Positions 6,170 through 61,300 of a stretch of 64,000 bases of DNA are shown one piece after another. Positions within the stretch are counted from its first letter, which is position 1. The number at the start of each line of letters is the position of its first letter. Position numbers and translations under genes: made by a program. The DNA lies in NCBI RefSeq assembly GCF_963676685.1, contig NC_092349.1, forward strand, positions 43,276,001 to 43,340,000, in the 5' to 3' direction. This DNA comes from Mytilus edulis. Taxonomy: Eukaryota. A model generated the notes under the pieces. The model did not search any database, was not told the origin of the DNA, and was given only the letters and a program-made list of their open reading frames with translations.

Positions 6170-7595
6170 CACGGGTTTTAAATTTCATACAATGATTACA
6201 ATGATTTGTTTTATAACAATGAAATAATAAAATGAAATACATCACAATAGAATACTGAACAGTTATTGCCTGCACATGGAAGTGAAAGTAATATGGAAGA
6301 CAATCTGTTTCTTTAAGGATTATTCCCCTTTTAATAGATATGGTGTTTTGAGCTGCATAAAAATGAAATGCAGCCCCAACTGATTAGATATAAGGGTATT
6401 TTTCTCCCATGTACACACAGCACCAATTACTAGATATTTATGTATATAATTTTATTTTGTTTACAATTGCAAGAATATGATAAGCACGTTAGAGATTTGA
6501 CTGCAGTTTATTAATGCATATATAAGCATTTACATATTAATAGATGAAATATGCATACACGTAGATGGAGAAATGTGAATTTAAATTTAATTTTTTGAAT
6601 TTAAAGTATATATATATTACTTTATAATCAGTTATGGACTTCAGAAGTGAACTAACATTCAATTGTTTCCATATTTTTTGTTATCTTTCGTGAATTATTT
6701 TATGGAGGGAGGTAGTAAATAGGCATATTTAACTTGTTGATCAATTCCAAAAAGTAACGATTTTTGCTATGCAAATATCATTAAAAAAATGCAATAAAAA
6801 AAATACTGAAATGCAATTCAAGCTAGACAAAGAAGAGAAAATGTATGGCTCATTGTTTAAAGGTCTAACCAAAAGGCCGTTTAACACCTATGACAAAAAC
6901 GAAAAAAACAATAAACAAAGACATTGATTACACTAGGCAGATAATATTGTTAGACTATGAATTAAAGGTTTTTTCCCGTTAGATCCCGTTAATCAATAGA
7001 TTACTTTTATAATGTGACATACATGTTAGTAAAAATCAATAAATGAATGAAACGAGAATATTAAGGAAACTGAATATAAAGACTGTGGTTAGTAAGAACG
7101 TCACCATTATATATATAATATTGATCGTTGACTATTTATTCAGTCATTTTATATATATATATATATTGCATATATAAAACAAAAAGTTGAATGTGTTTCA
7201 TCTTATTGTGTGATGCATAGGTTTTTTGTGTTTCATCTTATTGTGTGATGCATAGGTTTTTTTTATGTACAGTCTTAATTAAAAAAAAAAGAAAATAAAC
7301 AGAGAGTGGCAATTAAGTTACAGGATAGTTTATCGTTGTATAAAGCTCATCCATTACGTTTCATCTGCAAACCTCTCGATAAAAACCACCTGCAGGAATT
7401 GAGACGGATCGATACTAGTTGTATTAACCGCGTATAGTCTCCATTCATATATGCTTTTTTTCTACAATGCAACTCGACACTCGGATCACAATTATATCAT
7501 AACAAAAAATTATCACATAACCTTCAGATTTCGTATTCAAATACAAACCTGATTGACGGCTTAAACAAACAGAAACTGCTATTGTGAATTACATA

Positions 7596-7769
7596 AGCCG
7601 TATTTGGCACAACTTTTGGGAATTTTGAATCCTCAATGCTCCTCAATGCTCTTCAATTTTGTACTTGTTTGGCTTTATAAATATTTTGATATGAGCATCA
7701 CTGATGAGTTTTATGTAGACGAAACGCGCGTCTGGCGTATTAATTATCATCCTGGTACCTTTGATAACT
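7596..7769 (+). repeat. ~170-nt hammerhead-containing dispersed repeat, copy 1
   Basis: Near-identical to 34536-34700 from agccgtatttggcacaac to ctttgataact. Confidence 0.85.
7695..7738 (+). ncRNA. Minimal type I hammerhead ribozyme with one helix I mismatch
   Basis: gcatca-CTGATGA-gttt/tatgt/agac-GAAAC-gcgc-GTC-tggcgt. Full catalytic core; predicted cleavage after 7732. Confidence 0.75.
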
Positions 7770-30606: not shown

Positions 30607-30611
30607 AATAT

Positions 30612-30852
30612 AATTGAGAATAGAAATGGGGAATATGTCAAAGACACAACAACTCGACCAAATAGCAAATAAGAGTCGAAGACCACCAATGGGCCTTCAA
30701 CGCAGCAAGAAAATCCAGCACTCTGAGGTGGGACTCAGCAGGCCCCTAGATAAAATGTGAACTAGTTCAATGAAATGAAATTCAAACTGAACTCCAAACA
30801 TATAAATGAACTAAAATTTAAAAAAAAAACATACAAGACTAAAAAAGGCCAA
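30612..30852 (+). repeat. Dispersed repeat family C (aattgagaatggaaatggggaatgtgtcaaagagacaacaac...)
   Basis: Copies at ~37853-38142, ~46681-46975, ~51139-51204 (+) and ~34450-34515 (-). Confidence 0.8.
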
Positions 30853-31024
30853 AGTATATTTGTTAATATTCATTGATAGAATGATGATCCAACTGTGAAA
30901 ACTATATACACAGGAAAGCTTCATTGTTGTATAGGAGATCAGTGTCAAGTACGTTAGTAATACAATGTTTTTGCTTTTTGGATTTTTTTTGTGGGTTAAC
31001 TTGACAATAATTTTACTATTTCAG

Positions 31025-34000
31025 ATGGAACTTTACAGTCATATATTTACTTTGTTTGTTTTTTTATTGCGAACAAGTCCTGATACTATGCAAGCCTGGT
31101 ATCAAACAAGGTCAATTATTGATGAATTACAAAGTAAATGGAAAGAATGCAACCTTCTATGATGGATGTTCTACAAATCGTAAATGCAAATGTTTAGACA
31201 TATCGGACGGAATATTAGCCGACTGTTCCACATGAAATTTAATAAAATCTCCATATTTTGACGGAAGAGATGTGTCGGTAAATTTGAGATACAATTCGCG
31301 CACGTATCTCCCTGGCGATAGATATTTACCGCCGAGGCTGAAATGTTTAGACTTTGCACAAAATAAGATTTCAAAATTAAGGAATGGTAAATTGGTTCCG
31401 TTTTCTACTTCAAACAATATTATCAGCTTGAATTTAACGAGCAATTTATTGTCACTAGATGATGATACGTATTACCCTGGAGTATTTCAAAATCTAAAAT
31501 ATTTGAAATATTTAGATATTTCAAACAACTCAAACGAATATAAAAGCTATTATTGTCCAGACCAAGTATTTCAGGATCTTTCTTCACTTCAAAGTTAAAA
31601 ATATAACGTTTGGCAAGGGATTTTCTACTCTTAAACATCTCACTTCCCTGAAAATAACGGGAATCGCTGCAAAAGGTATCGTAAGCAGATAATACTTTGA
31701 CAACTTTCCCAATCTGGAACATCTCGACATATCAGCTACAACAGAATGGCGCAGAATTGATCACTTTGCTCTTACTGTTTTTGAAAAGGATGCACTACAA
31801 AAGCTAACTAAATTGCAGTATTTTGATATATTATATCATCGAAGACTTCACATGTGTGGGTTTCGAAATGTGACGAATGATCTACCATATACTTCAATTC
31901 GCATACTAAAAGCAAGTTATCTTGAATGTGAAAGATCAGTAAGTACCGTGTTATTTGTCGATGCTATCAAACCTTTGAATTCTACAAAGCTTGAGGTATT
32001 ATTTCTCGATGGAAATAATCTGGAAGAAACTGATATCCTTTTACCACGGCATCTCCCGCAGTCTCTGTGCTATTTCAGCGCTAGAGATAATAGATGGGTT
32101 GCTTCTAGATATAACAGGCTATTATTTAAACTTGGAATTATTTTTAATTATGGAATTTGCAAAATTTTCTGTGCTGGAAATTTTTAATAAATTCCATGCT
32201 TATTTGGTGTTATGATGTTTTGAGCAGTTCATAACACTTTCCATACAATGTATTTTGTATAGATAGTGTTGTGCACGGCACAGTACATTCTATTGAAAAT
32301 GTACTATCTTTTATGTAAAAGAAAGTGTTGTGCGCAGCACAGAACATTGAAGTACAGAATAAGCATGGAATTTACTAGAAATTTCAAGCACAGGAAATTA
32401 TGAAAAATCCATAATTAATAATAATTCCAAGTTTAAATAATAGCCTGTTATATGCTTATTTTGACATTGCTAGATTGACTGGTATAAAAGCTGTTGATTT
32501 GAGTTTTCAAAATAGACATCAGATGTCGCAGTCAAAACATTCCTGGTATTGTACTGAATATTTTCATGAAACTTCACACTGTATATGTGATAGACTTCCT
32601 ATTCTGGAAAATGAAAATATGTTTGACTGGAATCAAAATGAAGAAATGTCATATTTTACAAACAAAAACAAAAACAGCCATTTGGTAACAGCGTGCATTC
32701 CATACGATCCTACAAAATCCAACTTGCAATAATTCCTCCAAAAACAGAAAAGATCATTATGGAAAGTGCAAAAAAAGGAGACAGTATACCATCAATGTAT
32801 TTCAGTACACCAACAGTGAAGCATATATCATTGCGAAACAATCAGCTTTACTCTTTCACAGGCCCAATATGCAATTTGACACAGCTTGAATATCTTGATT
32901 TGTCAAATAACAGAGCTGATGATATATCAAGCTATATTTTTGGTTCCCTAGTAAACCTCCAATACTTAGGAATCGACAACAATCTACTCGGGTATTCCAA
33001 CATTTTCCATGATCACAGTTCTGTTTTTATTTTTGAAAATCAAACAAATTTGAAGTTTCTTAACATGTCATCGAATCGAATATCGATTTTATTTCAGAAT
33101 TTTCTGTTCAAAGCATCTGAACTGAAAACTCTTCTATTAGACCACAATTTACTGACGGATTGGAATATTTCTATTAATCATATGAAAGATCTCAACTTTA
33201 TTGATATAAGATGGAATCAGATATTATATCTATCTAGTGAGGGAATGAATTTACTTGAAAAAGCCTCTCATTTGAATATCACAATAGATATGTCCAATAA
33301 CCTATTTGAGTGTTCATGCGATTCAATGATTTTCTTGAAATGGCTTGCGATGCATAGACAGTACTTTAAAGGATTTGGTAATTATTCATGTATATATTTG
33401 CGTAAATCAATTAATATATTTGAAGCAAACTTGCATTTAAAAAAGAATTGTTATTCATATGTTGGAGTGATTGTTTCGGTGACAATCGGAATTATTATCT
33501 TTCTCGGAAGTATTTGTTCTATGATTATTTACCGATACCGATGGAAATTGCGATACTTTTATTACATTTTAAAAGGAGAATATGGTATAGATCACGATAA
33601 GACTGATGGCAATTTTCAATTCGACGCTTTCGTTTCTTATTCCGAAAATGATAGGTGGTTCCCGAAAGATTATATGATAGACTTTCTCGAGAAACAGAAA
33701 GGATTGCGCTTATGCATTCACCACAGGGACTTTATTGCAGGAAGTGCCATTGCTGAGAATATAACAAATGCTATTCACAATAGTAGAAAATGTGTTTGCA
33801 TTCTAACAAATAATTTTCTCGGGTCAAAATGGTGTATGTATGAATTTAATATAGCGCTTGAGGATATAGTGGTCTCAAGACAAGGAAGAAATAGCATAAT
33901 AATTGTTCAATTACTGAGAACTGATATTAGAAATATTCCTCGCGAAATGAAGTATGTAATGAACGATGACACATACCTTGATTATCCAGAAAACGAAGAA

Positions 34001-34048
34001 GACAGGATTATTTTTTGGGAAAGTTTTGAGAGCGATTTGAAATACTAG
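31025..34048 (+). pseudogene. Toll-like receptor with a disrupted N-terminal ectodomain and an open C-terminal LRR-LRRCT-TM-TIR frame (32693-34048)
   Basis: Signal-peptide-like MELYSHIFTLFVFLL; LRRNT CKC..ADCS; LRRs LKYLKYLDISNN, LEYLDLSNN, LKFLNMSSNRI; LRRCT NLFECSCD; TM GVIVSVTIGIIIFLGSICSMII followed by YRYRW; TIR FDAFVSYS, LCIHHRDFIAG, SKWCMYE, FW. Stops near 31233, 31597 and 31690; frameshifts near 31157, 31605 and 32725; MITE at 32112-32450. Confidence 0.88.
32112..32450. mobile_element. MITE inserted in the TLR coding sequence
   Basis: ~43-bp TIRs taacaggctattatttaaacttggaattatttttaattatgga and tccataattaataataattccaagtttaaataatagcctgtta (1 mismatch); TA or ATAT TSD. Removal rejoins ...ASRY|AYFDIARLTG... 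in frame. Confidence 0.9.
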
Positions 34049-34535
34049 TTCTAAACAGACATTGTTGGGAGTAGCGAATCCGAATCAGTGTCTGTAGTAT
34101 CGTTTAAGATTCATAAAATTAGTATCATAGTATCATACTTAATCCCTAACGGGGGGGATTGTGTTTGATTTTTATAGGATGAAGACATAATCTTTCATTC
34201 AGTTTATTTGAGGTCTGGTGCTGGCATGCTAGTAACTACTAGTAGTCCTTTGTTAATTTATGTATTATTATAATTTGGATTAGTTTCTTTTGTTACCTAT
34301 TCTGACATCGTACTCGGACTTCTTTTTAACAGAGTTTTACTCTGCATATTGCTGTGTGTGTTGTTTTTTTTTTACACTAGCTAGAGATTTTGGTTGAGGA
34401 TGAGATCTCACTTTACATGTTTTACCCTGTTAGTTTTGTTAATCCTTCGGCTATTTTCTGCTATATGGTCGAGTTGTTGTCCCTTTGACACATTCCCAAT
34501 TACCATTCTCAAATTTATTATCCCGTTCTTACCTT

Positions 34536-34700
34536 AGCCGTATTTGGCACAACTTTTTGAAATTTTGTATCCTCAATGCTCTTCAACTTTGTACCTGTTT
34601 GGCTTTATAAATATTTTGATTTGAGCGTCACTGATGAGTCTTATGTAGACGAAACGCGCGTCTGGCGTACTAAATTATAACCCTGGTACCTTTGATAACT
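34536..34700 (+). repeat. ~170-nt hammerhead-containing dispersed repeat, copy 2
   Basis: Near-identical to 7596-7769. Confidence 0.85.
34625..34668 (+). ncRNA. Minimal type I hammerhead ribozyme, intact
   Basis: Helix I gcgtca/tggcgt; CTGATGA 34631-34637; helix II gtct-tatgt-agac; GAAAC 34651-34655; palindromic helix III region acgcgcgt; GUC triplet with predicted cleavage after 34662. Confidence 0.8.
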
Positions 34701-35785
34701 ATCAATAGATTAAAATGAACTTAAGACACTAGTAAATAAGTAACTTTGTAATAAATTATTTTACACCATAGTTTAAACACTTTCAAAATTGACTGATATT
34801 TATCTTAACAACAAAATTTTATTGAAAGGCCTTTAAATGTCCATTATATTTTCGTCAATAATAATCAAAACAATATATACAGCATTCCGAAAACCCCGTA
34901 AAAAATGTATCATAATGTAGACATTTTGATTTTATTATATTAACGTGACACTTCAATGGTATCTTAAACATAAATTTTACATATCAATCCTGGTATTTGC
35001 GATTGTTTGATTTACATGTAGTTGAAATGCTTTACAAAAAGATATAGATCAATGTAATTAAAAGAAATGTCTAACATACAATTTACAAGTGAGAGGTTTA
35101 GCTAGCTATAAAAATATGTTTAATCCATCATTTTCTACGTAAGAAAACGGTCTGCAAAGTAAGTGTCCTTTGATAAGGGCAGAAAGTTCATATGTAAAAA
35201 TGGATGACGTGGAGTGGTATATACATAAGAAGAGTTGTATTCACATAAGAAGGTCAGTATTTGGAATTGAACAAAATTGTACGACCAATACCGAAAGGTC
35301 AACTTTGAAAACAATTTGTTTAAATTCAGATCTGTAGTAACTAGCTCACTCGTCGAAGCTCATATTAGCATAACAAAAACACATATCTACATATTAATTA
35401 GATTGATTTGAAAGACACTCGAAGTAACTGATGCCCTTGCATAGGACATTTTCATCTTGAATACCCTTGATTGGGAACACCCACGGTTTAAACTTTGGAA
35501 AAGTAGTATAACATAACGCTGCAAAGCCGTGATTAAAACATAAAGACTTTAGATTTTAGAATTGCATGTTACTGACATGTGCGTGTTTTATGGTGAATCA
35601 GTTGTATTTTAGTTTTATTCAAATGCGTAATTATTATTCCATGTTTGGTTTCCGTTTGAATAAAATATATTTGGATTCATTGTGTTATGTGTTGTTTCCG
35701 TTTACGATTTGAATTAATAAGTCGTTGTCACCTACAGTTCATCATAATACAGAAAACAGGCATATAATTTTACAACTGGTACTAC

Positions 35786-35914: not shown

Positions 35915-37223
35915 TTAGCTCACCTGGCCCAGAGGGCCAAGTGAGCTTTTCTCATCACTTTGCGTCCGTCGTCGTCGTCGGTCGTCATCGTCGTCTGTTA
36001 ACTTTTACAAAAATCTTCTCCTCTGAAACTACGGGGTCAATTTTTATAAAACTTGGCCACAATCATCATTGGGGTATCTAGTTTAAAAAATTGTGTCCGG
36101 TGAACCGGCCAACCAACCAAGATGGCAGCCATAGCTAAAAATAGAACATAAGGGTAAAATGTAGATTTTGGCTTATTACTCTGAAACCAAAACATTTAGA
36201 GCAAATCTGACATTGCAATATTGTTAATTTAGTGAAGACCTATCTGCCCTAAAATTGTCAGATGAATCCGACAACCGGTTGTTGGGTTGCTGCCCCTGAA
36301 TTGGTAATGTTAAGGAAATTTTGCTGTTTTTGGTTATTATCTTGAATATTATTATAGATAGAGATAAACTGTAAACAGCAATAATGTTTAGCTAAGTTAG
36401 ATGTACAAATAAGTCAACATGACCAAAATGGTCAGTTGACCCCATTAAGGAGTTATTGCCCTTTATAGTCAATTTTTAACCATTTTTCTAAAATTTTAGT
36501 TATCTTTTACAAAAATCTTCTTCTCTGAAACTACTTGGCCAAATTTAACCAAACTTGGCCATAATCATCATTAGGGTATTAAGTTTAAAAAATGTGTGTG
36601 GTGACCCAGCCAACCAACTAAGATGGCTGCCATGGCTAAACAAAGAACATAGGGGTAAAAGGTAGATTTCGGCTTACAACTCTGAAACCAAAGCATTTAG
36701 AGCAAATCTGACATGGGGTTAAATTGTTTATCAAGTCAATATCTATCTTGCATGAAATTTTCAGATGAATTGGACAACTGGTTGTTGGGTTGCTGCCCCC
36801 AATTGGTAATCTTTAAAGAATTTTGTTTTTGTTTTGTTTTTATCTTGAATACTTTAATAGATAGAGATAAACTGTAAACAACAATAATGTTCAGCAAAGT
36901 AAGATCGAAAAATAAGTCAACGTGACCAAAATTGTCAGTTGATCCCTTAAGGAGTTATTGCCCTTTAGAGTCAATTTTTAACAATTTTCATTAATTTGGT
37001 AATTTTTTTTAAATTTTTACAAAATGTTTTCCTCTGTATCTAAAGGGCCAAGTTTATTATAGATAGAGAAAATTGTAAGTAGCAAATATGTTCAGTACTA
37101 TAGTAAGATCTACAAACACATCAACATCACCAAAACACAATTTTTGTCATGAATCCATCTGTGTCCTTTGTTTAATATGCACATAGACCAAGGTGAGCGA
37201 CACAGGCTCTTTAGTGCCTCTAG
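35915..37223 (+). mobile_element. Helentron-associated interspersed element (HINE-like) with two ~500-bp tandem cores
   Basis: 5' hairpin agctcacctggccc-agag-ggccaagtgagct; (GTC)n microsatellite; cores start near 36003 and 36505 with a partial third near 37015; 3' subTIR aggtgagc plus stem-loop aggctctttagtgcct; T-rich flanks. Confidence 0.8.
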
Positions 37224-37760: not shown

Positions 37761-40056
37761 TGGAAGATTTAAGCTTTTATAATCTCTACCATGTCCTACT
37801 CAGTGCTACATTGACTGTCTTACGTTATATCCTTTTATTTAGAAACTTTTAGAATTGAGAATGGAAAGGGAGAATGTGTCAAAGAGACAACAACCCGGTC
37901 AAAGAGCAGATAACAAACGAAGGCCACCAATGAGTCTGCAATGCAGCGAGAAAATCCCGCACCCGAAGGAGTGCTTCAGCTGGCCTCTAACAAAAATGTA
38001 TACTAGTTCAGTGATAATTGACGTCATACTAAACTCCGAAATATATAAAAGAAACTAAAATTAAAAATCTTACAAGACTAACAAAAGCCAGAGGCTCCTG
38101 ACTTGGGACAGGCGCAAAAATGCGACGGGGTTAAACATGTTTTGCATCGGTGACTGGTCATTAATTTTGTCTGTCAGACGTCTTCAAAACTCTAAACGAT
38201 TCTATTGAGATTGAAGCATATTGTAAAATCATCGTCTTTTGTACATGTATGTACACATAGACCATGCAATTTGACCTCAAAGTTAGCTGAGGAACATTTT
38301 GTTTTTACCCAAAATCAATTTTGAGAATAAAATATGACTTTTACAAATTCAAAAGAGGGGATTCTGGCATACATGTATAAACATTAGACAATAGGAGCAC
38401 TAAGGCTTTTATGTAGAATAAGAATCGAATTCTTGAAGGAATTATTAAAATATCTGACAAATAGATATCTGGAGGGATAGAACTCGAAATATTCATATTA
38501 TTTATGGATTTCTAAATGTACTGGGCGTTAAATGTTTTTAATAAATCTAAAACGTAGTTTAGGTTCATTGCATTTATGTGTCAAATAATCTGTTACAGTA
38601 ATTATACCAATGAACAATAATTACCATTAATTGATAAATTACTTTAAAATTTGTCATTTTGAATATAATAAAATTATTATATCATATTCAATATCTGTAT
38701 TTAGTAAACCTTTTCATGTTCGTAATTTTTTGTTTTTGACATGCATTCGACATCAAAGGAAGATAGTCTGGCGCCACTGCAGGGTTGTGATTTTATCATT
38801 TTAGGTATCTGTATAATTTCTGAATAAAGTCAACAGTAGTATACCGCTGTTTAAAAGTCATAAATCGATTGAGAGAATACTGCGGTATCAGCTGTAAATA
38901 AATCTTTAGCTTTTTAGACAAAGTTGGAGTCCTTGTTCTATATATCTATCTATCATTGTTTGCAAGATTATTAGCAAAATTAGTAAAAAATGATAAAAAT
39001 CATCATATACGAAAAGGGGGTTATATGTAGCTACAATAAAGAATAAGTGATGATTTTTGCATTTCTCTTGTTGGTAGATCTTGTCTTACTGCATAATCTT
39101 TTTTTTTCTTTTTAAATTAATCTTAGAAAAAACGAAAGCAAAATGTTAAAAATCAACTATTTCTCCAATGAGAAAAACGTTTCAATCTATCATAGTTGTG
39201 TAATAAGTTAATTCTCCAACATGAACTTTGCGAAAATAATCTGCTGTTCCTAAAGAGTAAGAAGTTCCTCCATTTACACTGGTTGTATTGCTGATAATAA
39301 GTAGAACTCAATAAGCAAGCCAACACTCAGCGATTGTTCATGACCAGGAAATATTGATTTTGATATGGCAGTTTATTAGAGTTATACTACTTAGCAAAAT
39401 TACTGGGCCAGTGAGAGTAAGTCTGTTGTTTCTATAATCTGTTTGGAGAACTTACAAAATGTATTTGTGATTTCGTCATTTTTCGTTTTTGTTTCTTTTT
39501 GTCATGGCGTTGACAAGTTCGTTTTGAATGTCCCCTTGGTATCAACTGTCTTTTTTTTTTTACAGTGAATATGAATGAAACCCAAAAAGAAATACAAAAT
39601 CGAAATATCAAATATGATCTTGTTTAATTTACCAACGTTTTTTTGCAACGGCAATGCAAACGTGACAGTTATTGCAATGAATTGTGATTTATTCAAATTA
39701 TTTACAGGAACATAAATAACCAACACTGTTACGCTAAGTTTTCTCGTACCCAAACATTAAGAAAGTAAAACATAAGCATTCACTTAAACGTAATTTATAG
39801 ACTGAAGAAAACTCAAAAGCCAAGCTATAAAAATGTTATTCTTTTTTCCACATATTCTTGCAAGATATCAAGTATTTGACTCGTCATTCAAGTTTAAAAA
39901 TTACGCCTGACAAAAATATCACATCACAGCAACTTTCAAACTCAAGCCAAGGAAACAGTCGGTACTTCAGTGTGTGAAATGGAGCATGCAACGACCAAAT
40001 GTTCAGTTGTTTGCCCTTGACTGGCAAATTTAAATAAAACACATAAGAAGAAACAT

Positions 40057-42777
40057 TTATTTCAATTTGAAAATTGTGACACAGGAATGAGGATTTCCAT
40101 ACACGTACATTTGGTTTGCAGCCTTGATGACGATAGTATCTCCGGCCTCGAGATGTGCAGCCTGTACAGAAGTTCCGGTAGCGTAATGACTTCTGGCGCC
40201 AAATGCGTCACTTCCTTTTATGTAGACATGCGTGAGTTGTTTTTCATTTTTAAGAATGTAGAATGATGCAAACTGGGAATAAGACATAATGTAGACGGAA
40301 ACAAAATATAATCCCGGAATCTCACAGGTGTAAACTCCACTACTTGAGAACGTACTCAAGCTAGAAATTCCTGCTGAACTAATAGTATGTGGGAAGTGAA
40401 TTACGTCTCCTTGTGAGTAACTGCCATTAGCTGCACACGAGCTCAATGCAACTGAAAAATACGCATTTTTAGAAAAAAAAAGTTTCTAGAAAATTTTATG
40501 TTATATTGTTTGTCTATTCATAATAAATTAAAATTGTATTTTGGAAAAAAAAACATTAAAAGAAAAAAATTGATTGACAAGATTAAAATATTAATTCACC
40601 GTGTTGCTTCTTTCGTCGGTCATATTTTGATGTTAATTTGCTTTTATTTATACTCATATCTTTTTTTTAAATTCTTAAACGCTTTTATATTTTTTTTTCA
40701 TTGTGAACAAGACAATAACAATCAAAACCAAGGAGTAATCGAAGACTCACAAAACCAAGGGACATTTACATCAGCAGCTATAAATAATAATAGAAAGAAA
40801 CAACACGAACTCCACTAAAAACCGAGAGTGAAATCAGGTGCTCCGGAAAGGTAAGCATTTTATGCACCTTATACGACACCCGTCTTGTTAGTTCTTTGTT
40901 CATCTCGGTAATGATGGAAGGTTATTATGACTGAGGAAGAATACCAGATATGATTTCTGACACACTTTTGTCATAATGGTCAATCAGCTCATGATGGCGA
41001 CTTTAAAATTTCTTGAGTGATGACCTTAATTTGATTGATACAATTTACATTACTTTAACTGTGTACGATACTCCAATTTTAGAATGAAGCAATTCAATAT
41101 ATTGTCACCTAATATTATTTTGTTTGTTTTTCGATCGTGTAATTGCTTTATAGACGTCAAAGTCGTGAAATCCTCCCGTCGACGTTTCCTGTTTTCGCTT
41201 TTATTTGCAGGGAAGCAGTACCAATCTTTCTGCTAATATGATCACTACAAACCTGTATGATTTAACTCTGCAATCTCGTTTTCAATATGATCTGTAGTCT
41301 CGTTTTGGAGTTTGGTGAGGTTCCCTACTCTTGATTCAATACCTGGTATTGTAGATTTTATGATGTTACTGTTATCTTGGACTAAAAATAAATAGGTGCT
41401 TACATAAAAATGGTATTCTTAATTTTAAATATCTTTTGAGATTGTATATACGAGTCATAAATCTTCCGTGATATCATTTGCAATACATATGACTATTTCA
41501 AATACGATTGATTGTGAGTTGCTTAACGTCCAGTGGCAAATATTTCATGCATGTTCAGGACGATTTTCATATACGAAGTTAAGAAATAAATTGTGAAAGT
41601 TTATGAACATATGAATGTTTATTAACATGTGAATGCTGATTCCAAACTATTGCAAAACAAAATTGGTCCCAAGCGTTCTTAGTAAAGTATATATAACTCA
41701 GAGTTTGTGTGGGCCTAAGGAGATGGGGAGGTTTTTTATTATCTAGCAAGGTTTAAACCACAGCCTTTACATAGATAAAAATAAATGTATTTGAATTGAC
41801 GGAATAATTTGACGGACTCACAGACTAGAATATATATAACAAAATACTCAGAGACTTTATCAGAACACACAACAAGCCAATTTTAACAGAAGAATTCCAG
41901 AATTTAAAGCTTCATGACTAGCTTTCTGGAATGTTTTCACTGACACTGATAATTTTATTGTTTTCTTGTTAAAACTTCACAAATTAAAACTTAATACGCA
42001 AAACAAATTAGAGAAGTACAATACTGGTAGAATTATTTCAATATTTTTAAATGACGATCATTTACCCTGAAAATTAAACGACCAATGTGAGTAAAGTATA
42101 CTCATACAGTACATACCAGTAACGTTTAAAATCTTAATCTGATCTTCAATGAAATGGTACGCTGAGCGTGGAAATAATTGATCGTCGCTGCAACTCTTAT
42201 TCAGCTCATTTATACGTGTGTTAGCCGCTTTTATCTCAGCCTGTAAATTTGTCACATATATGCTACTGTTTTTGATATGATCTACCAATGGTGCAATTTT
42301 TGACGCGACTACGGTAACCTCGTTCTGAAGATGTCCGACGGTAACTAAGTTCATCATACTGTCTGAATGTTTCAAAACAATTAAGTCGTCGTTTACTTTT
42401 TGAGTTGCATTTTGGCATGCACCAAGGTCAGATCGAAGCTGTCTATTTTCTGCACGTATGTCGTAAATTTCTTCTTTAAGTGTCATCAAAATCTGTTTAA
42501 AAACGGCGGATTCACTTCTTAGGTTCTGCATCTCTTGCTCGCGTTTAATATCCATCCGCTTTGTAATCTGTATTTCGTTTTTCAAAACGGCAAATTCATT
42601 ATCAAGATTTAGTAAATATCTTTCCAGATGAATCCTTGTTGTATTTTCTTCGGAAATAATATCCGTTATCGAAAAATCATGCGTACGCTTTAACTTGGTT
42701 GAATGCATTGACAAATCTCCATTTAAAAATGAAAAACATGCTAAAATTAACAATGCTATAACACTTTCTGAAGTCAT
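40057..42777 (-). CDS. Secreted C1q-domain-containing protein with N-terminal coiled coil (~394 aa)
   Basis: Exons 42777-42117, 41381-41253 and 40451-40057, joined by two phase-1 GT/AG introns, total 1185 nt in frame. Signal peptide MTSESVIALLILACFSFLNG; heptad-rich stalk; gC1q motifs VALSSC, GDVIHFP, SGVYTCEIPGLYFVS, HLEAGDTI, HSCVTIFKL. Confidence 0.9.
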
Positions 42778-43877
42778 AACGCATAAATATTCGTACAAAA
42801 AAATGATGTCCTTACGAAATTAAATTTCACTTGTGGTTTAATTTATAGAATATATTCTTATCAAAATAAGGAAACTGCAGCAAAATTCAAAAGAAGCACG
42901 TCAACTACTTTTGATTGGTCTATTTTTTAATCTTCCGTGACATGTTCCAGTTATGTCAAACTGATATATTCACACGCCCTATATACAACATAATATAGCT
43001 TTATCTAATTTTTGTATATGGTGTACTCACCTGAATAAAAGTCGAAAAATGAATAATGGACCAGTACTTCAGTGTTGTATAAAAGTCACTGTGGTTAATA
43101 TACTTCGAAAGAGTGAGACTTATAATTCTCTATTCTTAAAAACTTGTGTGAGTGTGTGAATTTAAATTAATTTGTTTTTGTGTTTGTGTGTGCATAATTA
43201 TTAAATAAGATTATCATTGACTTTGTTCTGAAAGTTGTAACATAACTTTTGTACTGACAGATCTGGTGTTTTTCTTTTTTTACACTTTTACTAAGAAGAA
43301 AATAAAACAAAATTGAGATATTGTTCTGTTGTACAAGTCGTAATTCTTTCCATAAATTTCTTGATGCATGCGTTTAGCGTATTACATCTTTCCTACTTAG
43401 ACTAAGATGTCATGTATAATTATAGTAATATATCTTGTTGTTTGTTGTTGTAATTATACTGAGTTTTCTCCTGTAGCTGTTATAACATTGCTGGGACTGG
43501 TTTATATGATAATTTTTCTATGAACAATCAATGTGTGATCCAGGAATGAAAGAACGTCTGCTTGACAAGTTGTATCATTGATACAACCAAAGGTTGACTT
43601 TTTTTTTTACTTAGGTATACGGATAAGGCCAACGTTCTCCCTACTGGCATTACCATGTAGGCTAAGAAACGGTCGGTGCGTTATGCGGTGTGTTTAATTT
43701 TCAGAGCTAGTTTAACTTTTGAAAGTTTAATGGCGGTTGTATTATTGGCATAGCTATAAAACTTGTTTATTTTGCTTTCTTTTAAATGGTTCAAATATTT
43801 TCCATTGGACGTCCAGCAAACAGCAGTCAAGCAAACGATATTACATTAAACTCACAATAAATAAACATCGGTATATA

Positions 43878-45282
43878 TGTCGTGTACATTTTATTATTTT
43901 GTACAGGTTATTACTTGTACAAAATTTTCATACAAGTAATTACTTGTATGACCCCATCATACAGGTTATTACTTGTATAAATATAATTGTACAAGTAATA
44001 ACCTGTACAAATTTTGTGGAGAAAAAGATAATAACTTGTACAACTCATTATCTTTCGTATTTTTTGAAATTTATATTGTGTTTGTTTTTTTGTTTATCAG
44101 TATTATTGTTGAAATGTTAGAAGTTTACAGATGAACGAAGGACGCAAAGTAATGACATAAGCTCATGTGACATCTTATGCAAATTTAGCTAAACAGCTAG
44201 ATTCCACGTCAATACGGACTTCTGGTGCAAAGTGACATGGTCGTTAAACGCAAAAATAAATTGGTACCCTTCATTCATTTATTTCAGCTCTGGCCAAATG
44301 AGTTTAACATGTTTAAGTTCTGTAATTACAATAGCCGTAAATTCCCTTCCATTATCACTTTGCAGTATATGTGGAGATCCCATAAGTAGAAAAAAGTGGC
44401 CCTGGTAGTGCATGATCCACTTGTATTCTCCATTTGGAAATGACTGATAGTCAACAAGGTCTACTTGACAACGGGAATTAAAGTCTGTAGAAGTGATAGG
44501 ACGAACAACTAATTTTGTGGTTGCAGTACGACTTTTCTTCAAAATACATTGTTCACACATCTGAATGAAAATTCTGATAAATTCTCTGCTGATATTGGCA
44601 AATTGTTTTATTAACTCCTTGTATGTCTTGTGGATGCCTCCATGGCCAATTCCAGAATGTGCAGTTCTAATGTTAATGGATAAAGTTCATCTACTGTACA
44701 ATAGTAAAAAAAAAATGTCGCCTTTGCGAATGAGTTTTTCAATGCCTGCTACACTCAAAATATCATATTGCCTTAAGAAATATCTTTGAAGAGCAGTCTT
44801 TTTGGAACTTAATTTTGCTTTCTTTACATTCCCAATAGTCTCTCTGTATCTTTCACGTGTAAATAATGAATTATTAGAAGAATTATTATTGTCATCACAC
44901 AATTTAATTATTTCATCATTAAATTTCTTTTCTATACTGTTTTCCATCTCTGCACTTTAGTTTTGACTACTTAAATGAACAGTTTTGCTCATATACTTGA
45001 TATGTTAAATGTACTCACATATTGAGAGTTTATAACTTTAGGCAAAGTAATGAATTATATGTTAAAAGGGAAACAATTTGTTGTGAACTTCAAATAGGCC
45101 AATATAAAATAATGATTTGTACAAGTTATTATCTTTTTCTCCACAAAATTTGTACAGGTTATTACTTGTACAATTATATTTATACAAGTAATAACCTGTA
45201 TGATGGCATCATACAAGTAATTACTTGTATGAAAATTTTGTACAAGTAATAACCTGTACAAAATAATAACATGTACACGACA
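43878..45282 (-). mobile_element. Ginger2/TDD-like integrase DNA transposon (KRBA2/SCAND3-like), internally deleted
   Basis: TGT...ACA termini; ~170-bp near-perfect TIRs (43878-44050 and 45110-45282); TATA TSD (43874-43877 and 45283-45286); integrase remnants inside. Confidence 0.88.
44279..44947 (-). pseudogene. Integrase-like transposase remnant (HHCC zinc finger + partial rve core)
   Basis: HSGIGHGG..CEQC, PITSTDFNSRCQVDLVD, YKWIMHYQGHF, PHILQSDNGREF, IWPELK. Frameshifted, missing the segment between the first two catalytic blocks and the C-terminus. Confidence 0.85.
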
Positions 45283-47763
45283 TATACATTTAATTTTGTT
45301 TGCTAAATCCACTGGCATATATGTCTGGCATATCTATGTCAATTGGTGTATATAAATAGAAAGTGAAGTCGAACCAAACACAGTCACCAACAATTTACAA
45401 TGTCACGTGTTAATTTTCACTGCAACTGAAGTCGGCATATTGAATCAAGCATATAGAAAATGTAAACTTTGAGAAGAGAAGTAATTGTAGCCCTCGTTTT
45501 CACTTTTATAAGGTTTCAACATCCAATTGGTATGCAACATTCATTCGGTCATGACAAAAGCTGTAAGATTGACACCAGCTGTGTCATAGTTCTTATTATA
45601 TTATCAAAGAGGTCGTCCTTGTATTCATATGCAAGACATTCAGGTCAGGACATATAGTTTCATATTGTCATAAAACAAGTGCAGGTCAGTATATCGGTAT
45701 TCTATGTAAGGCCGTATCAGACTGTTATAATAGGGAACGAATAATCATGGTATCACTGTAAATTTGCACAAACTAACAAAAAAATTACGATGCAATGAAA
45801 AAGGGGTCAATAAGACAACAATCCAACGACAGAAAAACAAAAGATGTATATTGTGGTTAGCAAAACTGATATGGTTTTCAAATTATAGTCATGTGTCTTA
45901 AAATGCTCGAAAAGGGTGGCTATAATCTTGATTGCCATGGCTGCTCAAAATGGCTGCCAGCTTGAGTCTGTGTTTATGTTTTATAAATCGACATGGAACT
46001 GAATATAGGTAGGAATGAATTATGCAGACACCATTCTCTAAATAATTAAACTAAATGCTAACTTTGAATGCGCATGAAGATGGTAACCATTCAAACCCTA
46101 CCCATTTTAAATTCGTTTGTGGACTTACAAAAGGGTACAAAAAAGGATAAACGATAGAATCAGTTCAGAAAAAAACAAACATACGTACGTGTATTATAAA
46201 TGTATGACAAAAAAACCCAAGTACACATAAAACAGTAATAAATAATGCCATGCAATGTAGCAACGAATAGCACAGTTTCTCAAAGCAATCAATTGTAATG
46301 CTTATTCTAGACGAATTAACAAACTTAGTACCATTAAGCATGACATGACCATATTTTTAAAATGCGTATCATGTTCATAATTTCATTTCAGCTTTTCAGT
46401 AAAGTATTTTAAAACTCTCTCATAAATAACTATATTAGCAGTAATTATACCTGTAATATTCCAAGTTTTATATAAAAAAAAAGACGATTTGGTACAATTG
46501 CCAATGCAACAACTCTGCGATCATCGGTCTTATGGCTACCGTTAACCTATTCCCAAGCCTGTAAAAATTTCGGTGGAACAAGTCATTTATTCTACTTTTT
46601 TCCAGAGTTTGTTCTTTGTTATTTTTTATTAACAAGTTAAGCTTAATCCAATAGACGGCACTGAATTATACCTTTCTAAAAATTGAGATTGGAAATGATG
46701 AATATGTCAAAGAGACAACAACCTGACCATAGAGCAGACAACAGCCGAAGGCCACCAATGGGTCTTCAATGCAGCGAGAAACACCCGCACCCGGAGGAGT
46801 CCTCCAGCTGTATATAACAAATATTATATGTAAACTAGTTCAGTGATAATAGCCGTCATACTTAACTCCGAATTATACACAAGAAACTAAAATTAAAAAT
46901 AATACAAGACTAACAAAGGGCAGAGGCTCCTGAGTTTGGACAGGCGCAAAAATTCGGCAGGGTTAAACATGTTTAGAAATTTAAAATGTTATACTCTCGT
47001 GACAAATACAATGGTACGGACCAGCTAGAATTAAAGTATGCTAAGCTTTTTTATATAGTATATACTGTATATTATGGAACAGCTTAAAAGGCACAAAACC
47101 ACGTACATTGCTATAATATCAATACAAGCCGGCATTCTTATCAGTATATCATCGATGAAAGGCTTCAAGTAAAAGTTTATCCATTAATCTGGACTAAAGT
47201 GATAATCTGTAATTAAAAAATAAAGATGTTTTTTACCATTATACTAGTTTGTTTTGGGTGGTTGCTGCAAACAGTTCAATTGTTCCGTGTTGTTATTTTT
47301 ATTTAATTATTTTTTTACATTTCATCTCAATAATTATCTATCTTATTTTTCACATCCCTGTAAGATCACAACAAGTGCATATCATGTGCAAATACTAAAA
47401 CACAGTAGGTAGCAGTTTACCCTACTTTAACGGAAGCCATATACACCTTTATCACGAAGGTCATTGATCTTCAATGAACTGGCAAGAACCCGTTGTCTTT
47501 ATAAGTGGTACTTATCTCAATAAATTCTATCACGTGATTAAAAGTACTTATGTCAAGGATACTAACAGCTTGACTTATGTTAGTTAAAGTAAGATTACTG
47601 ATATGCACTTGTAAACAGGATAAGAAATGGAGAGATGGAAAAATATCTCGAAAGAGAAATTTGAAAAAAGTTTCAGATGTGAAAATGTATTTTTAACTTC
47701 TATTACATTTGGTCTCTGTTGGAGAGTTGTCTAATTTTCAACCACACTTTCTCGTTTATATAT

Positions 47764-58300: not shown

Positions 58301-61300
58301 GAGCGATTCTGGCAAGTTGATTCTTTTTTATTTTAGAATCTTCGATAAAAGATCACCCGGGTCAGACTCTGGTATTACATTTGCTAATTGGATGGGATTT
58401 GCATTTCCGCTGTCGATCGTTATATTGCTGATGAGCTGGATATGGTTACAGTTAATTTTCCTGCGATCATTGTGAGTATAATATTGTAGTATACAATTGC
58501 AATATACAGTTGTTATCCATTCGTTTGATGTGTTTGGACTTTTGATTTTGCCTTTTGATTTTGGACTTTCCTTCTTGAATTTTCCTCGGAGTTCAGTATT
58601 TTTGTGTTTTTACTTTTTGCAAGACAAGGATGGACATTACAAGGTTTAAACTCAATAAAAAAAACCTTGTTATCGTTGCTTTACATGAATTTTGACAACT
58701 TATACATCCCATGGCATGTAGGTTGAAGAAAAGATGCATACTAGTATATTTATTATGATAATCAAGACTTTCGTTTTTATGGGTGTATACACCATTAAGA
58801 GAGGTGAGCCACAAGATCAGTAGTAAGTTTTTATCAGGCTAATTATGAACCATAATTAAAATAATCTGTTTAATAGAGGCTTAAAATCTATACTATACAA
58901 AAGATTGAAAATACGAACCAGTGGTTTTTAAGAGTTATTTCCCTTGACCAAGTTCTACCTCCTTAATGTTAAGGTTAACAATATCTATCTGAGTTACATT
59001 TGCGAGCCTTCAAATAATATAATACAATATATAAAAGAGGACAACAACAACCATGCACACTTTTGGAGATATATCAATCAGTTTTACGTGAGCACAAATT
59101 AACACTTTTGCCTTTCTAAAGCATATGCAATTTAAGTAAACACATATTAAAATTCATGCAGTCGAACAGGGTATATCTGTTTTTGATCAGAAACAAATTT
59201 TCAAATGGGTTTCAAGAAGTGTCCTTGTATAAAAATTTATAAATTTTGTTACTCATTTTGAAAAGCCGTTGCATCTATAGATGTTGAGCCTTGCTTACGT
59301 TTTCAATATAAAACACAATGAAAATTATTATCCTTATGTATATAAATGATTTACTAAGGACAAAAGATGAGAAAAGAGACTCATCACACGTACCAGTCTT
59401 ATTATTTGGAAACATAGTCAGCAGTGATTTTTTATTATCCAGGTGTATACGAAAAACCGACGCAGTGAGGACAGCAGCAATTCAGTCGGCTATCAAACAT
59501 GAACGCAAGAAACTTGGAAGAGTGACGTAAGTTTGATTTCCGGAGACCTCACGATTAACGACTACATAGGTCAAACAATAAAGTTCTTACAGAGCATAAA
59601 AAAAACAATAAATCCAAAAGGCTGTGCTAAATCTGGCAAGCGGTCACACATTACTGAGGGTAGAAAAAAAAGTTTTTACGAAGGATTTACAGAAAAATTA
59701 TATTCATGTCAGCAAAGTATTTCTAACAGCTCTCAGTGATTCAATGTTGTCTAAGACTGATATGGTATTGACCCAGTGGTTGAAAAATGTAAAAACGCAA
59801 AATAACACACGCTACTCGGTTACTTTTAACAGAATGAATTGATTGATATGCAAAAGATTACAAAAACCTTGAAAACATGTGCAAAGTTTGATCTTTAACT
59901 TCGTACTTTATTTGGCCTTTTAACTTTTTTGGATTCGAGCGTCACTGATGAGTCTTATGTAGACAAAACGCGCGTCTGGCGTATATACAAAATTTAGTCC
60001 TGGTATCTATGATGAGTTTATTTACAGGAAAACATTCTTTTCGTTCGCCTCAATTTTTTTTAATGACAGATTTCCTTACCTAAGCATAAAACATCAAGTA
60101 AGTTCGTTTTTACTATCTAAATTAGATTAGGTGAACAACTGAGAAATTAAAACCTTTGGTCAAGGTTTTTTCTTGTGTAAATTAGAAGGTTTAAAAACAT
60201 GTAGATGATGTGTAACAACTAAAGTACCATATTTATAATATATAGATATTGAAAATTACAAATAAGATATGGTGTGTTTCATTTAAATATATCTGAATTG
60301 TCTATCTTTTATCATTCTCTAACATTCCAGACTAAGTTGTTAATAGACCTCAATCATGGACAATGTCAGCTAATTTTAGTATAATAAATCCTTATGAACA
60401 TGTACAGTTTTATTTATTTTACAATACACTTTTTTCAGGTTTGGGGAAGTTGTTGTTTTGATTTGTTTTATATGCTTAGCTATGTTGTGGATATTCAGAG
60501 ATATTCCAGGAATGGGAGGATGGGCATACCTGTTTCATCTCGATAAAGAGTAAGCTAACAATATGTATTTATGTAATCGATAGAAAATAATTAAGAAAAA
60601 TGTTGAATATTGTCTTCAACTACACCATTAATATAATCTTAAAGCAACGAGGATTAAGCACATTAGATAATTACTTGTCTTTCTTTATAAGAAGCAATAT
60701 ATTTGAAATACAAGTAAGTGTATGGTGTTCGTCATTAAAACAGAACCAAACTTTATAAAAATATAAAAATATATATGTTTAAAAACTTTTAATGCCTTTA
60801 TCATTCCAAGTCCCATGTCTTTAGAAGCAGCGACGGCTTTATGCATTAAATAGAAACAATATCATATAAAGGACACAGTAATATACTGGTGTTCAAAATT
60901 CATAAATCGATTGAGAACAAAAGAAATCCGGGTAACAAAACAAATTTGGACAACAAACGATACGACATAACACACTATTCAAACGAAACCATAAACAATC
61001 AACAACACATTTCTATATATATAAAAGAAAAAACATAATTTAAGGCAAAGATAGTAACTGACGATTTTTTAATTTTAAACATATCCATAATCCACAAGGG
61101 AGCTAAAAACTCAGTTTCTAATTAAATTGTAACGATACAGACTTGAATATTTGAAATTATGTATTACAAAAAGGAACATAAATAAATATCAGTTTGTATT
61201 TTAAATTTTTTCAGCAGTGAATTTTAGATCGGTATATTATAAGAAGTTGTATTTTAAGGATAATTATTTTAATATCAGTCATTTATATGAGTTGTTTTTA

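What the first reader, a model, noticed from the sequence alone, without database searches (positions are those of the whole stretch)
34625..34668. Intact dimer-type hammerhead ribozyme in sense orientation in the likely TLR 3' UTR
Seen: a complete type I hammerhead (helix I gcgtca/tggcgt, CUGAUGA, 4-bp helix II, GAAAC, GUC). Its helix III has only 2 bp and lies within the palindrome ACGCGCGU. It is ~580 nt after the TLR stop on the same strand, and by eye the first AATAAA after the stop (34750-34755) is downstream of it. Established: minimal type I hammerheads with palindromic helix III are associated with Penelope-like retroelements and retrozymes and cleave as dimers. Inference: a TLR transcript could include the ribozyme and be cut from its poly(A) tail only when it pairs with another RNA carrying the repeat. 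That would be a concentration-dependent RNA switch on an immune-receptor locus.
Basis: partly seen in the sequence, partly recalled or inferred. Interest (0 to 1): 0.8.

Follow-up and report, generated by a model that had tools for sequence, protein, structure and literature searches.

The report
Truncated mussel retrozyme hammerhead copy
The hammerhead ribozyme motif is real, but it is one of more than 8,000 copies of an already published mussel "retrozyme" jumping element, here a dead half-length copy lying behind a Toll-like receptor gene that is itself broken, so it is ordinary rather than an immune-gene switch.

Summary
Window 34625-34668(+) is a complete type I hammerhead (Rfam Hammerhead_1, 33.0 bits against a gathering score of 34; E 2.4e-4 window-wide). 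It starts 577 nt after a TIR-domain ORF stop, and the first AATAAA lies downstream of it.

It is not a locus-specific device. It sits in a 174-nt, 5'-truncated solo copy (34529-34702, 97% identical) of the 355-nt Mytilus non-LTR retrozyme of Cervera & de la Peña 2020. The exact 32-nt core occurs 8,302 times in this genome. All copies examined share one 3' end and have scattered 5' ends. The 44-nt motif differs by one loop base from the published Mg353 ribozyme, which self-cleaves in a one-ribozyme construct, so dimer-only cleavage is not established.

The TLR is a pseudogene in this haplotype: two in-frame stops, two frameshifts and a 338-nt MITE. One RNA-seq run gave no reads on its unique parts, and reads over the hammerhead continue into other retrozyme copies. 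In 19 other TLR paralogs surveyed, no sense copy lies within 1.5 kb after the stop. Contigs of one run hint at a less-broken, possibly transcribed allele; this is unresolved.

This scan has reported the same retrozyme family elsewhere in this genome. Verdict: already known, low interest.

The parts
34625..34668 (+). Type I hammerhead ribozyme motif. The predicted cleavage is 3' of C at 34662.
   Evidence: Read directly from the sequence. Rfam RF00163, 33.0 bits, full length 1-45. It differs at one position (loop 2) from the HHR of the published construct Mg353 (compared by eye).
34529..34702 (+). 5'-truncated solo copy (0.49 unit) of the 355-nt mussel non-LTR retrozyme. It corresponds to monomer positions 182-355.
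   Evidence: blastn of a natural monomer from L003 against the window gives 97.1% over 174 nt. The copy has the family's fixed 3' end ...GATAACTAT.
34123..34528 (-). Unnamed high-copy repeat in inverted orientation, abutting the retrozyme head-to-head. Its 75-nt head (34444-34519) is shared with other window repeats.
   Evidence: The block 34123-34702 is homologous to L064 at 75-89%. The head matches 30607-30681, 37855-37923, 46679-46751 and 51130-51204. DNA word depth is very high.
31011..34048 (+). TLR pseudogene in this haplotype. It carries LRR, TM and TIR regions and aligns to an intact 908-aa single-ORF paralog in four pieces in three frames.
   Evidence: tblastn of the L032 ORF. Three-frame reading. 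Pfam TIR and LRR_8. In-frame TGA at 31233-31235 and TAA at 31690-31692. A frameshift near 31592 and another near 32717, where X1 contigs carry 17 nt and 1 nt more.
32113..32450 (.). 338-nt palindromic MITE inserted in the TLR coding sequence.
   Evidence: It fills the gap in the alignment to the paralog. It has terminal inverted repeats ACAGGCTATTATTT.../...AAATAATAGCCTGT with TA-rich flanks. There are at least 801 first-look candidates genome-wide, and it matches itself on both strands.
34750..34755 (+). First canonical AATAAA after the TLR stop, 88 nt downstream of the cleavage site.
   Evidence: Pattern scan of 34049-35300.
7588..7769 (+). Second 5'-truncated retrozyme copy (monomer 181-353, 89%). 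Its hammerhead is weakened by a helix I mismatch and a helix II wobble.
   Evidence: Rfam Hammerhead_1 26.1 bits, E 0.045.
59889..60013 (+). Third retrozyme piece, of the Mg353-like subfamily, with an inactivating G12-to-A change (GACAAAAC).
   Evidence: Only a weak Rfam match. The flank resembles the published Mg353 sequence.

Best explanation
The hammerhead belongs to a dead-on-arrival, 5'-truncated half-copy of the Mytilus non-LTR retrozyme. This is a non-coding, roughly 355-nt retroelement that normally sits in head-to-tail arrays. In that element's life cycle the ribozyme cuts multimeric transcripts into unit-length RNAs, which are circularised and copied back into DNA by a Penelope-like reverse transcriptase (the mechanism comes from the literature). 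Here only 174 nt with a single ribozyme were inserted. They abut another repeat head-to-head, about 480 nt behind a TLR gene that is itself a pseudogene in this haplotype. With one cleavage site and no second unit, this copy cannot release a retrozyme RNA. Its position behind the TLR is most likely incidental. If a read-through transcript exists, the ribozyme could cut it in cis, but nothing indicates a selected regulatory role.
For: A 355-nt tandem unit exists elsewhere in the genome (L003, 3.0 copies, 98% matches). The window copy is 97% identical to monomer positions 182-355. In the 29 fetched loci other than the window's own, every insertion ends at monomer position about 355. Their 5' ends scatter from 1 to 313 and they hold up to eight tandem or partial units, the signature of target-primed reverse transcription described for PLEs (PMC8557442). 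The exact 32-nt core occurs 8,302 times, 4,289 forward and 4,013 reverse, with 0 for the reversed control. Published description: about 5,000 type I HHRs in M. galloprovincialis in repeats of 350-390 bp, abundant circRNAs, and kobs about 0.1/min (PMC7229834). The Mg353 construct carries the same ribozyme apart from one loop base. RNA-seq reads over the element continue into retrozyme sequence on both sides (loose ends at 34529 and 34702), so they come from full-length, head-to-tail or circular copies, not from this locus. Monomer GC is 38%, within the family's under-45% range. The TLR is broken and has zero RNA-seq depth on its unique parts. No enrichment was found behind other TLR genes.
Against: The Rfam score is 1 bit under the curated threshold. 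Self-cleavage of this copy was not tested. No empty site or clear target-site duplication was found for this insertion. Run X1 contigs (about 92% identical, RNA status only guessed) cover the TLR and its flank up to 34515 and again 34831-34984, but nothing at 35242-35575. That pattern looks like a transcript of a less-broken allele reaching past the element. Three of four TLR paralogs in this cluster carry a sense retrozyme piece within 1.5 kb of the stop.
Confidence: 0.93

Rival explanations
1. The ribozyme lies in the TLR 3' UTR and cuts the mRNA from its poly(A) tail only when it dimerises with another RNA carrying the repeat, giving a concentration-dependent switch on an immune receptor.
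For: There is no canonical poly(A) signal between the stop and the ribozyme. The homodimer MFE is exactly the double-hammerhead, at -29.5 kcal/mol against 2 x -9.2. The monomer catalytic fold (-5.7) is less stable than the MFE, and 6-9 kcal/mol worse than the MFE in local context. Retrozyme RNA is abundant in mussel tissues and in run X24. X1 contigs hint at a transcribed allele reaching past the site.
Against: The TLR is a pseudogene here. RNA-seq depth is zero on unique TLR sequence and on 34741-34907. An almost identical ribozyme cleaves in a single-hammerhead construct, and the paper assigns the need for dimers to amphibian, not invertebrate, HHRs. The copy is young (97% to the unit) and is one of thousands. 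Paralog flanks are not homologous, the paralogs' own copies have decayed cores, and 0 of 19 other TLRs has a sense copy within 1.5 kb.
Confidence: 0.02
2. An incidental but real cis effect. In haplotypes with an intact allele, read-through TLR transcripts are constitutively cut by the ribozyme acting alone, lowering mRNA stability as proposed for the Clec2 3'-UTR hammerhead, without any switch.
For: All core nucleotides are intact. A near-identical HHR is active co-transcriptionally. The X1 coverage pattern drops from about 7-11 upstream to about 3.7 downstream of the element and to 0 at 35242-35575. A precedent exists in Clec2 (PMC6155905).
Against: X1 is only guessed to be RNA. Its contigs break at the repeat, so neither the presence of the insertion in that allele nor continuity across it is shown. 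No pile-up of read ends at 34662/34663 was seen in X24 (table 6). In local context the catalytic fold is disfavoured.
Confidence: 0.05
3. The roughly 170-nt stretch is a short mobile unit of its own, not a truncated retrozyme. This is the reading of another first-stage note on copy A.
For: Copies A and B start at almost the same monomer position (181 and 182), and L064 starts at 177. Five of the roughly 35 insertions examined begin between positions 177 and 193.
Against: 5' ends form a continuum from 1 to 313 with one common 3' end. The 174 nt are co-linear with, and 97% identical to, the right half of the 355-nt unit. Upstream flanks differ between copies.
Confidence: 0.03
4. A chance resemblance to a hammerhead in AT-rich DNA.
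For: The Rfam score is just below the gathering score. The single-strand fold has z = 0.17.
Against: There are 8,302 exact copies of the core against 0 for the reversed control. The match to Rfam is end to end with E 2.4e-4. It is near-identical to an experimentally cleaving ribozyme.
Confidence: 0.005

Closest known systems
Mytilus galloprovincialis non-LTR retrozyme (Cervera & de la Peña, NAR 2020, PMC7229834; construct Mg353)
   Same: The ribozyme is the same apart from one loop-2 base. The repeat family has a unit of 350-390 bp (355 bp here), low GC, tandem arrays, thousands of copies, and head-to-tail RNA in RNA-seq.
   Different: This copy is a solo 0.49-unit fragment with a single ribozyme. 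It belongs to the sister subfamily of Mg353 (window copy C is the Mg353-like one). It cannot give a unit-length or circular RNA.
Penelope-like elements (PLEs, including Naiad) and their non-autonomous dependants (PMC8557442)
   Same: Fixed 3' end, heavy 5' truncation, partial tandems and head-to-head inverted neighbours. Hammerheads are associated with canonical PLEs.
   Different: There is no ORF here. Which reverse transcriptase mobilises the retrozyme was not tested. Naiads themselves lack canonical HHRs according to that paper.
Newt satellite 2 / axolotl retrozyme hammerheads, which act as dimers (Forster et al. 1988, cited in PMC6155905; PMC7229834)
   Same: Type I topology, a short helix III with a palindromic centre, and a predicted double-hammerhead that is much more stable than two monomers.
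   Different: The amphibian HHR_Amex1 has a 1-bp helix III and is nearly inactive alone. The mussel motif has 2 bp plus a tetraloop, and its near-twin cleaves at about 0.1/min in a one-ribozyme transcript.
Discontinuous hammerhead in the 3' UTR of rodent Clec2 genes (reviewed in PMC6155905)
   Same: A hammerhead downstream of the stop codon of an immune-related receptor gene, upstream of a poly(A) signal.
   Different: The Clec2 motif is a type III discontinuous HHR conserved among orthologues in functional genes. This one is a young repeat copy behind a pseudogene, with no conservation among paralogs.

Membership tests
Hammerhead ribozyme type I (Rfam RF00163) | Conserved catalytic core: CUGAUGA, GAAA, and a cleavage triplet GUC (NUH) | tested here: met
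   All are present at 34631-34637, 34651-34654 and 34660-34662 and align to the model consensus.
Hammerhead ribozyme type I (Rfam RF00163) | Three helices around the core, with helix I open (type I) | tested here: met
   Helix I is 6 bp (GCGUCA/UGGCGU, two G-U). Helix II is 4 bp with a 5-nt loop. Helix III is 2 bp plus a tetraloop, or 8 bp in the dimer.
Hammerhead ribozyme type I (Rfam RF00163) | Score at or above Rfam's curated gathering score | tested here: inconclusive
   33.0 bits against 34. E is 2.4e-4 window-wide. This is a threshold, not a structural feature.
Hammerhead ribozyme type I (Rfam RF00163) | Self-cleavage | not testable with these tools
   Only indirect evidence: the published Mg353 HHR, differing by one loop base, cleaves co-transcriptionally at about 0.1/min.
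Metazoan non-LTR retrozyme (Mytilus family) | Homology to the roughly 350-390-bp HHR-bearing repeat unit | tested here: met
   97.1% over 174 nt to a natural 355-nt unit from L003.
Metazoan non-LTR retrozyme (Mytilus family) | Head-to-tail tandem arrangement, dimer or larger, so that two ribozymes flank one unit | tested here: not met
   This locus holds 0.49 unit and one HHR. The family does form arrays elsewhere. The copy is therefore a fragment of the family, not a functional retrozyme.
Metazoan non-LTR retrozyme (Mytilus family) | Low GC (under 45%), no ORF, no LTR/PBS/PPT | tested here: met
   GC is 38% for the unit and 37% for this copy. No ORF of 100 aa or more overlaps it.
Metazoan non-LTR retrozyme (Mytilus family) | Expression as unit-length linear or circular RNA | tested here: inconclusive
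   RNA-seq reads cross the head-to-tail junction (loose ends at 34702 and 34529), so family RNA exists. Circularity cannot be shown, and this copy is not the source.
Regulatory 3'-UTR hammerhead (Clec2-like) | Lies in the 3' UTR of an intact, expressed gene | tested here: not met
   The gene is broken in this haplotype. Depth on unique TLR sequence is zero in RNA-seq run X24. Other alleles remain unresolved (X1).
Regulatory 3'-UTR hammerhead (Clec2-like) | Conserved at the homologous position in related genes | tested here: not met
   Paralog homology ends at the stop codon. The paralogs' retrozyme pieces differ in position and truncation, share no derived changes, and have mutated cores. None of 19 other TLRs has a sense copy within 1.5 kb. 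Orthologues in other species were not tested.
Dimer-obligate hammerhead (newt / ASBVd type) | Helix III too weak for the monomer; the double-hammerhead is favoured | tested here: met
   In silico only. The monomer HHR fold is -5.7 against an MFE of -9.2. The dimer MFE is the double-hammerhead at -29.5 kcal/mol.
Dimer-obligate hammerhead (newt / ASBVd type) | Little or no cleavage as a single motif | not testable with these tools
   The literature argues against it. The one-HHR Mg353 transcript self-cleaves, and the paper ascribes the dimer requirement to amphibian motifs. Trans-dimers forming in the test tube cannot be excluded.

The most novel reading that the evidence does not exclude
In mussels that carry an intact allele of this TLR (hinted at by the X1 contigs), the mRNA reads through the composite transposon block. 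It is then cut at 34662, either in cis or as a double-hammerhead with the very abundant retrozyme RNA. TLR mRNA stability would then be coupled to retrozyme RNA level.
Probability: 0.03. Interest if true: 0.65.

Novelty: already known. Interest (0 to 1): 0.12.

Why it matters
As it stands the finding matters little. It adds one more decayed insertion to a published, very abundant mussel retroelement family, next to a pseudogenised member of a greatly expanded TLR family. It is useful as annotation: most of the apparent "3' UTR", 34123-34702, is transposon sequence. It is also a caution that intact hammerheads near genes in bivalve genomes are expected by chance at this copy number. If the novel case were true, it would be a second natural example, after Clec2, of a hammerhead acting on an immune-receptor mRNA, and the first in which a mobile element's RNA level feeds into it.

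Tried and rejected
- The Rfam gathering-threshold scan of the whole window found nothing. The motif appears only with E-value thresholds.
- The single-strand fold of 66 nt gave a non-hammerhead MFE and z = 0.17. This is uninformative for a ribozyme with this short a helix III.
- I looked for an empty site in the TLR paralogs. Homology stops at the stop codon, so no empty site is available.
- I looked for a target-site duplication around 34529/34702 and around the whole block 34123/34702. Only a weak TATCA(T/A)AG resemblance was found, and I make no claim from it.
- Shared ancestry of the three retrozyme pieces behind cluster paralogs was considered and rejected. Truncation points and distances differ and there are no shared derived changes.
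- General enrichment of sense retrozymes behind TLR genes was tested and rejected: 0 of 19 outside the cluster, P(>=3 of 23) about 0.12-0.17.
- The RNA status of X1 could not be controlled on a silent stretch, and table 3 was truncated before showing whether X1 lacks the two stop codons.
- A look-up of the repeat head in earlier findings by sequence was blank, which means nothing here.
- The costly protein searches were not used, because Pfam and the paralog comparison settled the gene's identity.

Full report
**1. Is the motif there?**

Yes. Window 34625-34668(+) reads GCGUCA-CUGAUGA-GUCU(UAUGU)AGAC-GAA-ACGCGCGU-C-UGGCGU. All invariant hammerhead core positions are present.
- Helix I has 6 bp, two of them G-U.
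- Helix II has 4 bp.
- Helix III can form only A-U and C-G closed by a GCGC tetraloop, and lies in the palindrome ACGCGCGU (34654-34661).
- The cleavage site is 3' of C34662.

Rfam's Hammerhead_1 model matches end to end at 33.0 bits. That is one bit under the gathering score of 34, which is why the default scan lists nothing. The E-value is 2.6e-6 in a local scan and 2.4e-4 for the whole window. The ORF upstream ends with TAG at 34046-34048, 577 nt before the motif. The first AATAAA is at 34750 and an ATTAAA at 34709, both behind the ribozyme.

**2. What is it part of?**

The core pattern occurs a second time in the window, at 7701, and a diverged third copy lies at about 59.9 kb.

The window is one 64-kb stretch of a 1.37-Gb assembly with at least 14 chromosome-scale contigs, which looks like a mussel. 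A search of that assembly with the 164 nt around the motif gave over 2,000 first-look candidates. Many hits were spaced about 355 nt apart. Locus L003 holds three head-to-tail units of 355 nt at 98% identity.

I used one natural unit from L003 as a ruler:
- Copy B, the finding, is 34529-34702 and equals unit positions 182-355 at 97.1%.
- Copy A is 7588-7769 (positions 181-353, 89%).
- Copy C is 59889-60013 (positions 230-349, 82%).

In the 29 fetched loci other than the window's own, every insertion ends at unit position about 355 (...GATAACTAT). Their 5' ends scatter between positions 1 and 313, and they hold up to eight tandem or partial units. A fixed 3' end, heavy 5' truncation and partial tandems are the insertion signature described for Penelope-like retroelements and their dependants (PMC8557442).

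The exact 32-nt ribozyme core occurs 8,302 times in the genome (4,289 forward, 4,013 reverse). The reversed-pattern control gives 0.

**3. Is it known?**

Yes. Cervera & de la Peña (NAR 2020, PMC7229834) described about 5,000 type I hammerheads in Mytilus galloprovincialis. These lie inside repeats of 350-390 bp, which they named non-LTR retrozymes. The repeats are expressed as abundant circular RNAs, and a cloned genomic repeat self-cleaved co-transcriptionally at about 0.1/min.

The sequence of their construct Mg353 is given in the supplement. Compared by eye, its 44-nt hammerhead differs from the window's at one loop-2 base. Its flanks resemble window copy C, so copies A and B belong to the sister subfamily; the paper reports two HHR consensus types.

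The same scan has already filed this family several times on other DNA of this genome. My searches confirm independently the "one fixed end, scattered starts" statement of one of those notes.

**4. Dimer or monomer?**

In silico the monomeric catalytic fold (-5.7 kcal/mol) loses to a non-catalytic MFE (-9.2). It costs 6-9 kcal/mol in local context. The MFE of two copies is exactly the double-hammerhead with an 8-bp intermolecular helix III (-29.5 kcal/mol).

However, Mg353 carries a single hammerhead and still cleaves. [quoted passage not shown] "Cut only when paired with another RNA" is therefore not established, and I could not test it.

**5. Is it in a TLR 3' UTR?**

The 451-aa ORF ending at 34048 has LRR and TIR domains, but it is only the tail of a gene. 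Two paralogs about 130-145 kb away have single open frames of 908 and 905 aa. Aligned to the first of these, the window gene falls into four pieces:
- 31011-31595, frame 3
- 31594-32112, frame 1
- 32451-32729, frame 3
- 32654-34045, frame 2

The disruptions are:
- In-frame TGA at 31233-31235 and TAA at 31690-31692, each in the middle of conserved motifs.
- Two frameshifts, near 31592 and near 32717.
- A 338-nt palindromic MITE at 32113-32450, with at least 801 relatives in the genome.

In this haplotype the TLR is a pseudogene.

The stretch between the stop and the ribozyme is itself transposon sequence. 34123-34528 is another high-copy repeat in inverted orientation, abutting the truncated retrozyme head-to-head. 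The same junction recurs at three or more other loci, for example L064.

**6. RNA evidence (one call allowed)**

Run X24 is raw RNA-seq with the same species label; 12.4 million reads were read. Depth is zero over all unique TLR sequence (30900-32068 and 32570-34072) and over the unique flank 34741-34907. Depth is about 240-260 in each read orientation over the retrozyme piece.

Of 1,666 laid reads, 1,578 fit only partly. The loose ends at 34529 continue into retrozyme positions before 182. Those at 34702 continue into the start of the next unit. Those at 34669 continue into the other subfamily. These reads therefore come from full-length, head-to-tail or circular retrozyme RNA made elsewhere.

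No pile-up of molecule ends was reported at 34662/34663.

Run X1 (Logan contigs; "RNA" is only a guess) behaves differently. Contigs about 91-93% identical to the window cover 31022-31958, 32635-33331, 33443-34293, 34300-34515 and 34831-34984, with no coverage at 35242-35575. These contigs carry 17 extra nt at 31592 and one extra T at 32717, exactly where the window is frameshifted. One of two X15 contigs also has the extra T.

This looks like a divergent, less-broken allele that may be transcribed to beyond the element. Three limits apply. The contigs break at the repeats. The run's nature is unproven. I could not see whether the two stop codons or the insertion are present in that allele.

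**7. Is there any sign of selection for a hammerhead behind TLR genes?**

Homology between the window gene and its cluster paralogs stops at the stop codon. Two paralogs also carry sense, 5'-truncated retrozyme pieces, 17 nt and about 1,380 nt after their stops. These differ in truncation point (unit positions 263 and 207), share no derived substitutions, and have mutated cores. They are independent, older insertions.

I fetched 6 kb from each of 20 further TLR paralogs. In the 19 where a stop could be located, no sense copy lies within 1.5 kb of the stop. Fragment density in these flanks is about one locus per 12-14 kb. That gives P(>=3 of 4) of about 6e-4 to 9e-4 for the cluster taken post hoc, but P(>=3 of 23) of about 0.12-0.17 for the family. 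I record the cluster coincidence as unexplained but weak.

**8. Verdict**

The hammerhead is real, and it is the ribozyme of a published mussel retrozyme. This copy is a solo half-unit that cannot produce retrozyme RNA. It lies in a block of transposon sequence behind a TLR pseudogene.

The mechanism I commit to is incidental insertion by target-primed reverse transcription with 5' truncation. The insertion pattern is shown; the enzyme is inferred from the literature. The ribozyme's function belongs to the element's own life cycle. The immune-switch model has no support beyond geometry.

Noticed in passing
window 32113-32450: A 338-nt palindromic MITE splits the TLR coding sequence. Its terminal inverted repeats are ACAGGCTATTATTT.../...AAATAATAGCCTGT, with TA-rich flanks. 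There are at least 801 first-look relatives genome-wide at 89-97% identity, and it matches itself on both strands at 76%.
   Followed up: partly
window 34123-34702; L064 228-980; also G000 C11:44143884 and C6:18690207: The truncated retrozyme is joined head-to-head to an inverted copy of another high-copy repeat, and the same junction (retrozyme starting at unit position about 177-182) recurs at several loci. The repeat parts are 75-89% alike while the retrozyme parts are about 96-97% identical to the unit. This suggests recurrent joining (a PLE-style inverted insertion, or microhomology) rather than one duplicated composite.
   Followed up: partly
L041 1617-1765; L043 3232-3324; window 34529-34702: Three of the four TLR paralogs of the C6:43.17-43.31 Mb cluster carry an independent, sense-oriented, 5'-truncated retrozyme piece within 1.5 kb after the stop codon (about 1,380, 17 and 480 nt). 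In 19 other TLR paralogs no such sense copy lies within 1.5 kb. Post hoc P is about 6e-4 to 9e-4 for the cluster and 0.12-0.17 for all 23.
   Followed up: yes
window 31022-34984 as seen in run X1, and 32717 in X15: A roughly 92%-identical version of the TLR locus exists in other data. It has 17 nt more at 31592 and one T more at 32717, so it lacks both frameshifts. One of two contigs of the best DNA holder also has the extra T. This suggests a pseudogene allele and a less-broken allele segregating.
   Followed up: partly
window 30607-30741, 37851-38142, 46679-46974, 51130-51204, 34444-34519(-): A 75-nt head (AAAATTGAGAATGGAAATGGGGAATGTGTCAAAGAGACAACAACC...) is shared by several repeat families with different bodies. 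It has extremely high word depth in DNA runs.
   Followed up: no
window 40057-40446(-) and 42058-42798(-): These ORFs look like a C1q-domain exon and a coiled-coil exon of a mussel C1q-domain-containing gene on the minus strand. The region is immune-gene rich (a TLR cluster plus a C1qDC gene).
   Followed up: no
window 43898-44011, 45149-45262, 15481-15572: Palindromic repeats give sub-threshold Rfam matches on both strands to plant microRNA precursor families (mir-5014 at 44-49 bits against a gathering score of 101; MIR774 at 43-45 against 80). They are most likely MITE-like hairpins, not microRNA genes.
   Followed up: no
window 35997-36946 and 63195-63324: There are two copies of a unit of about 500 nt (80-87% identical) just downstream of the locus, and a 65-nt tandem duplication (95%) near the window's end.
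   Followed up: no
RNA-seq run X24 on window 34529-34702: Retrozyme RNA of both subfamilies is abundant, and reads cross the head-to-tail unit junction. No excess of molecule ends at the cleavage site was reported. This fits the mainly circular or multimeric RNA reported for mussels.
   Followed up: partly
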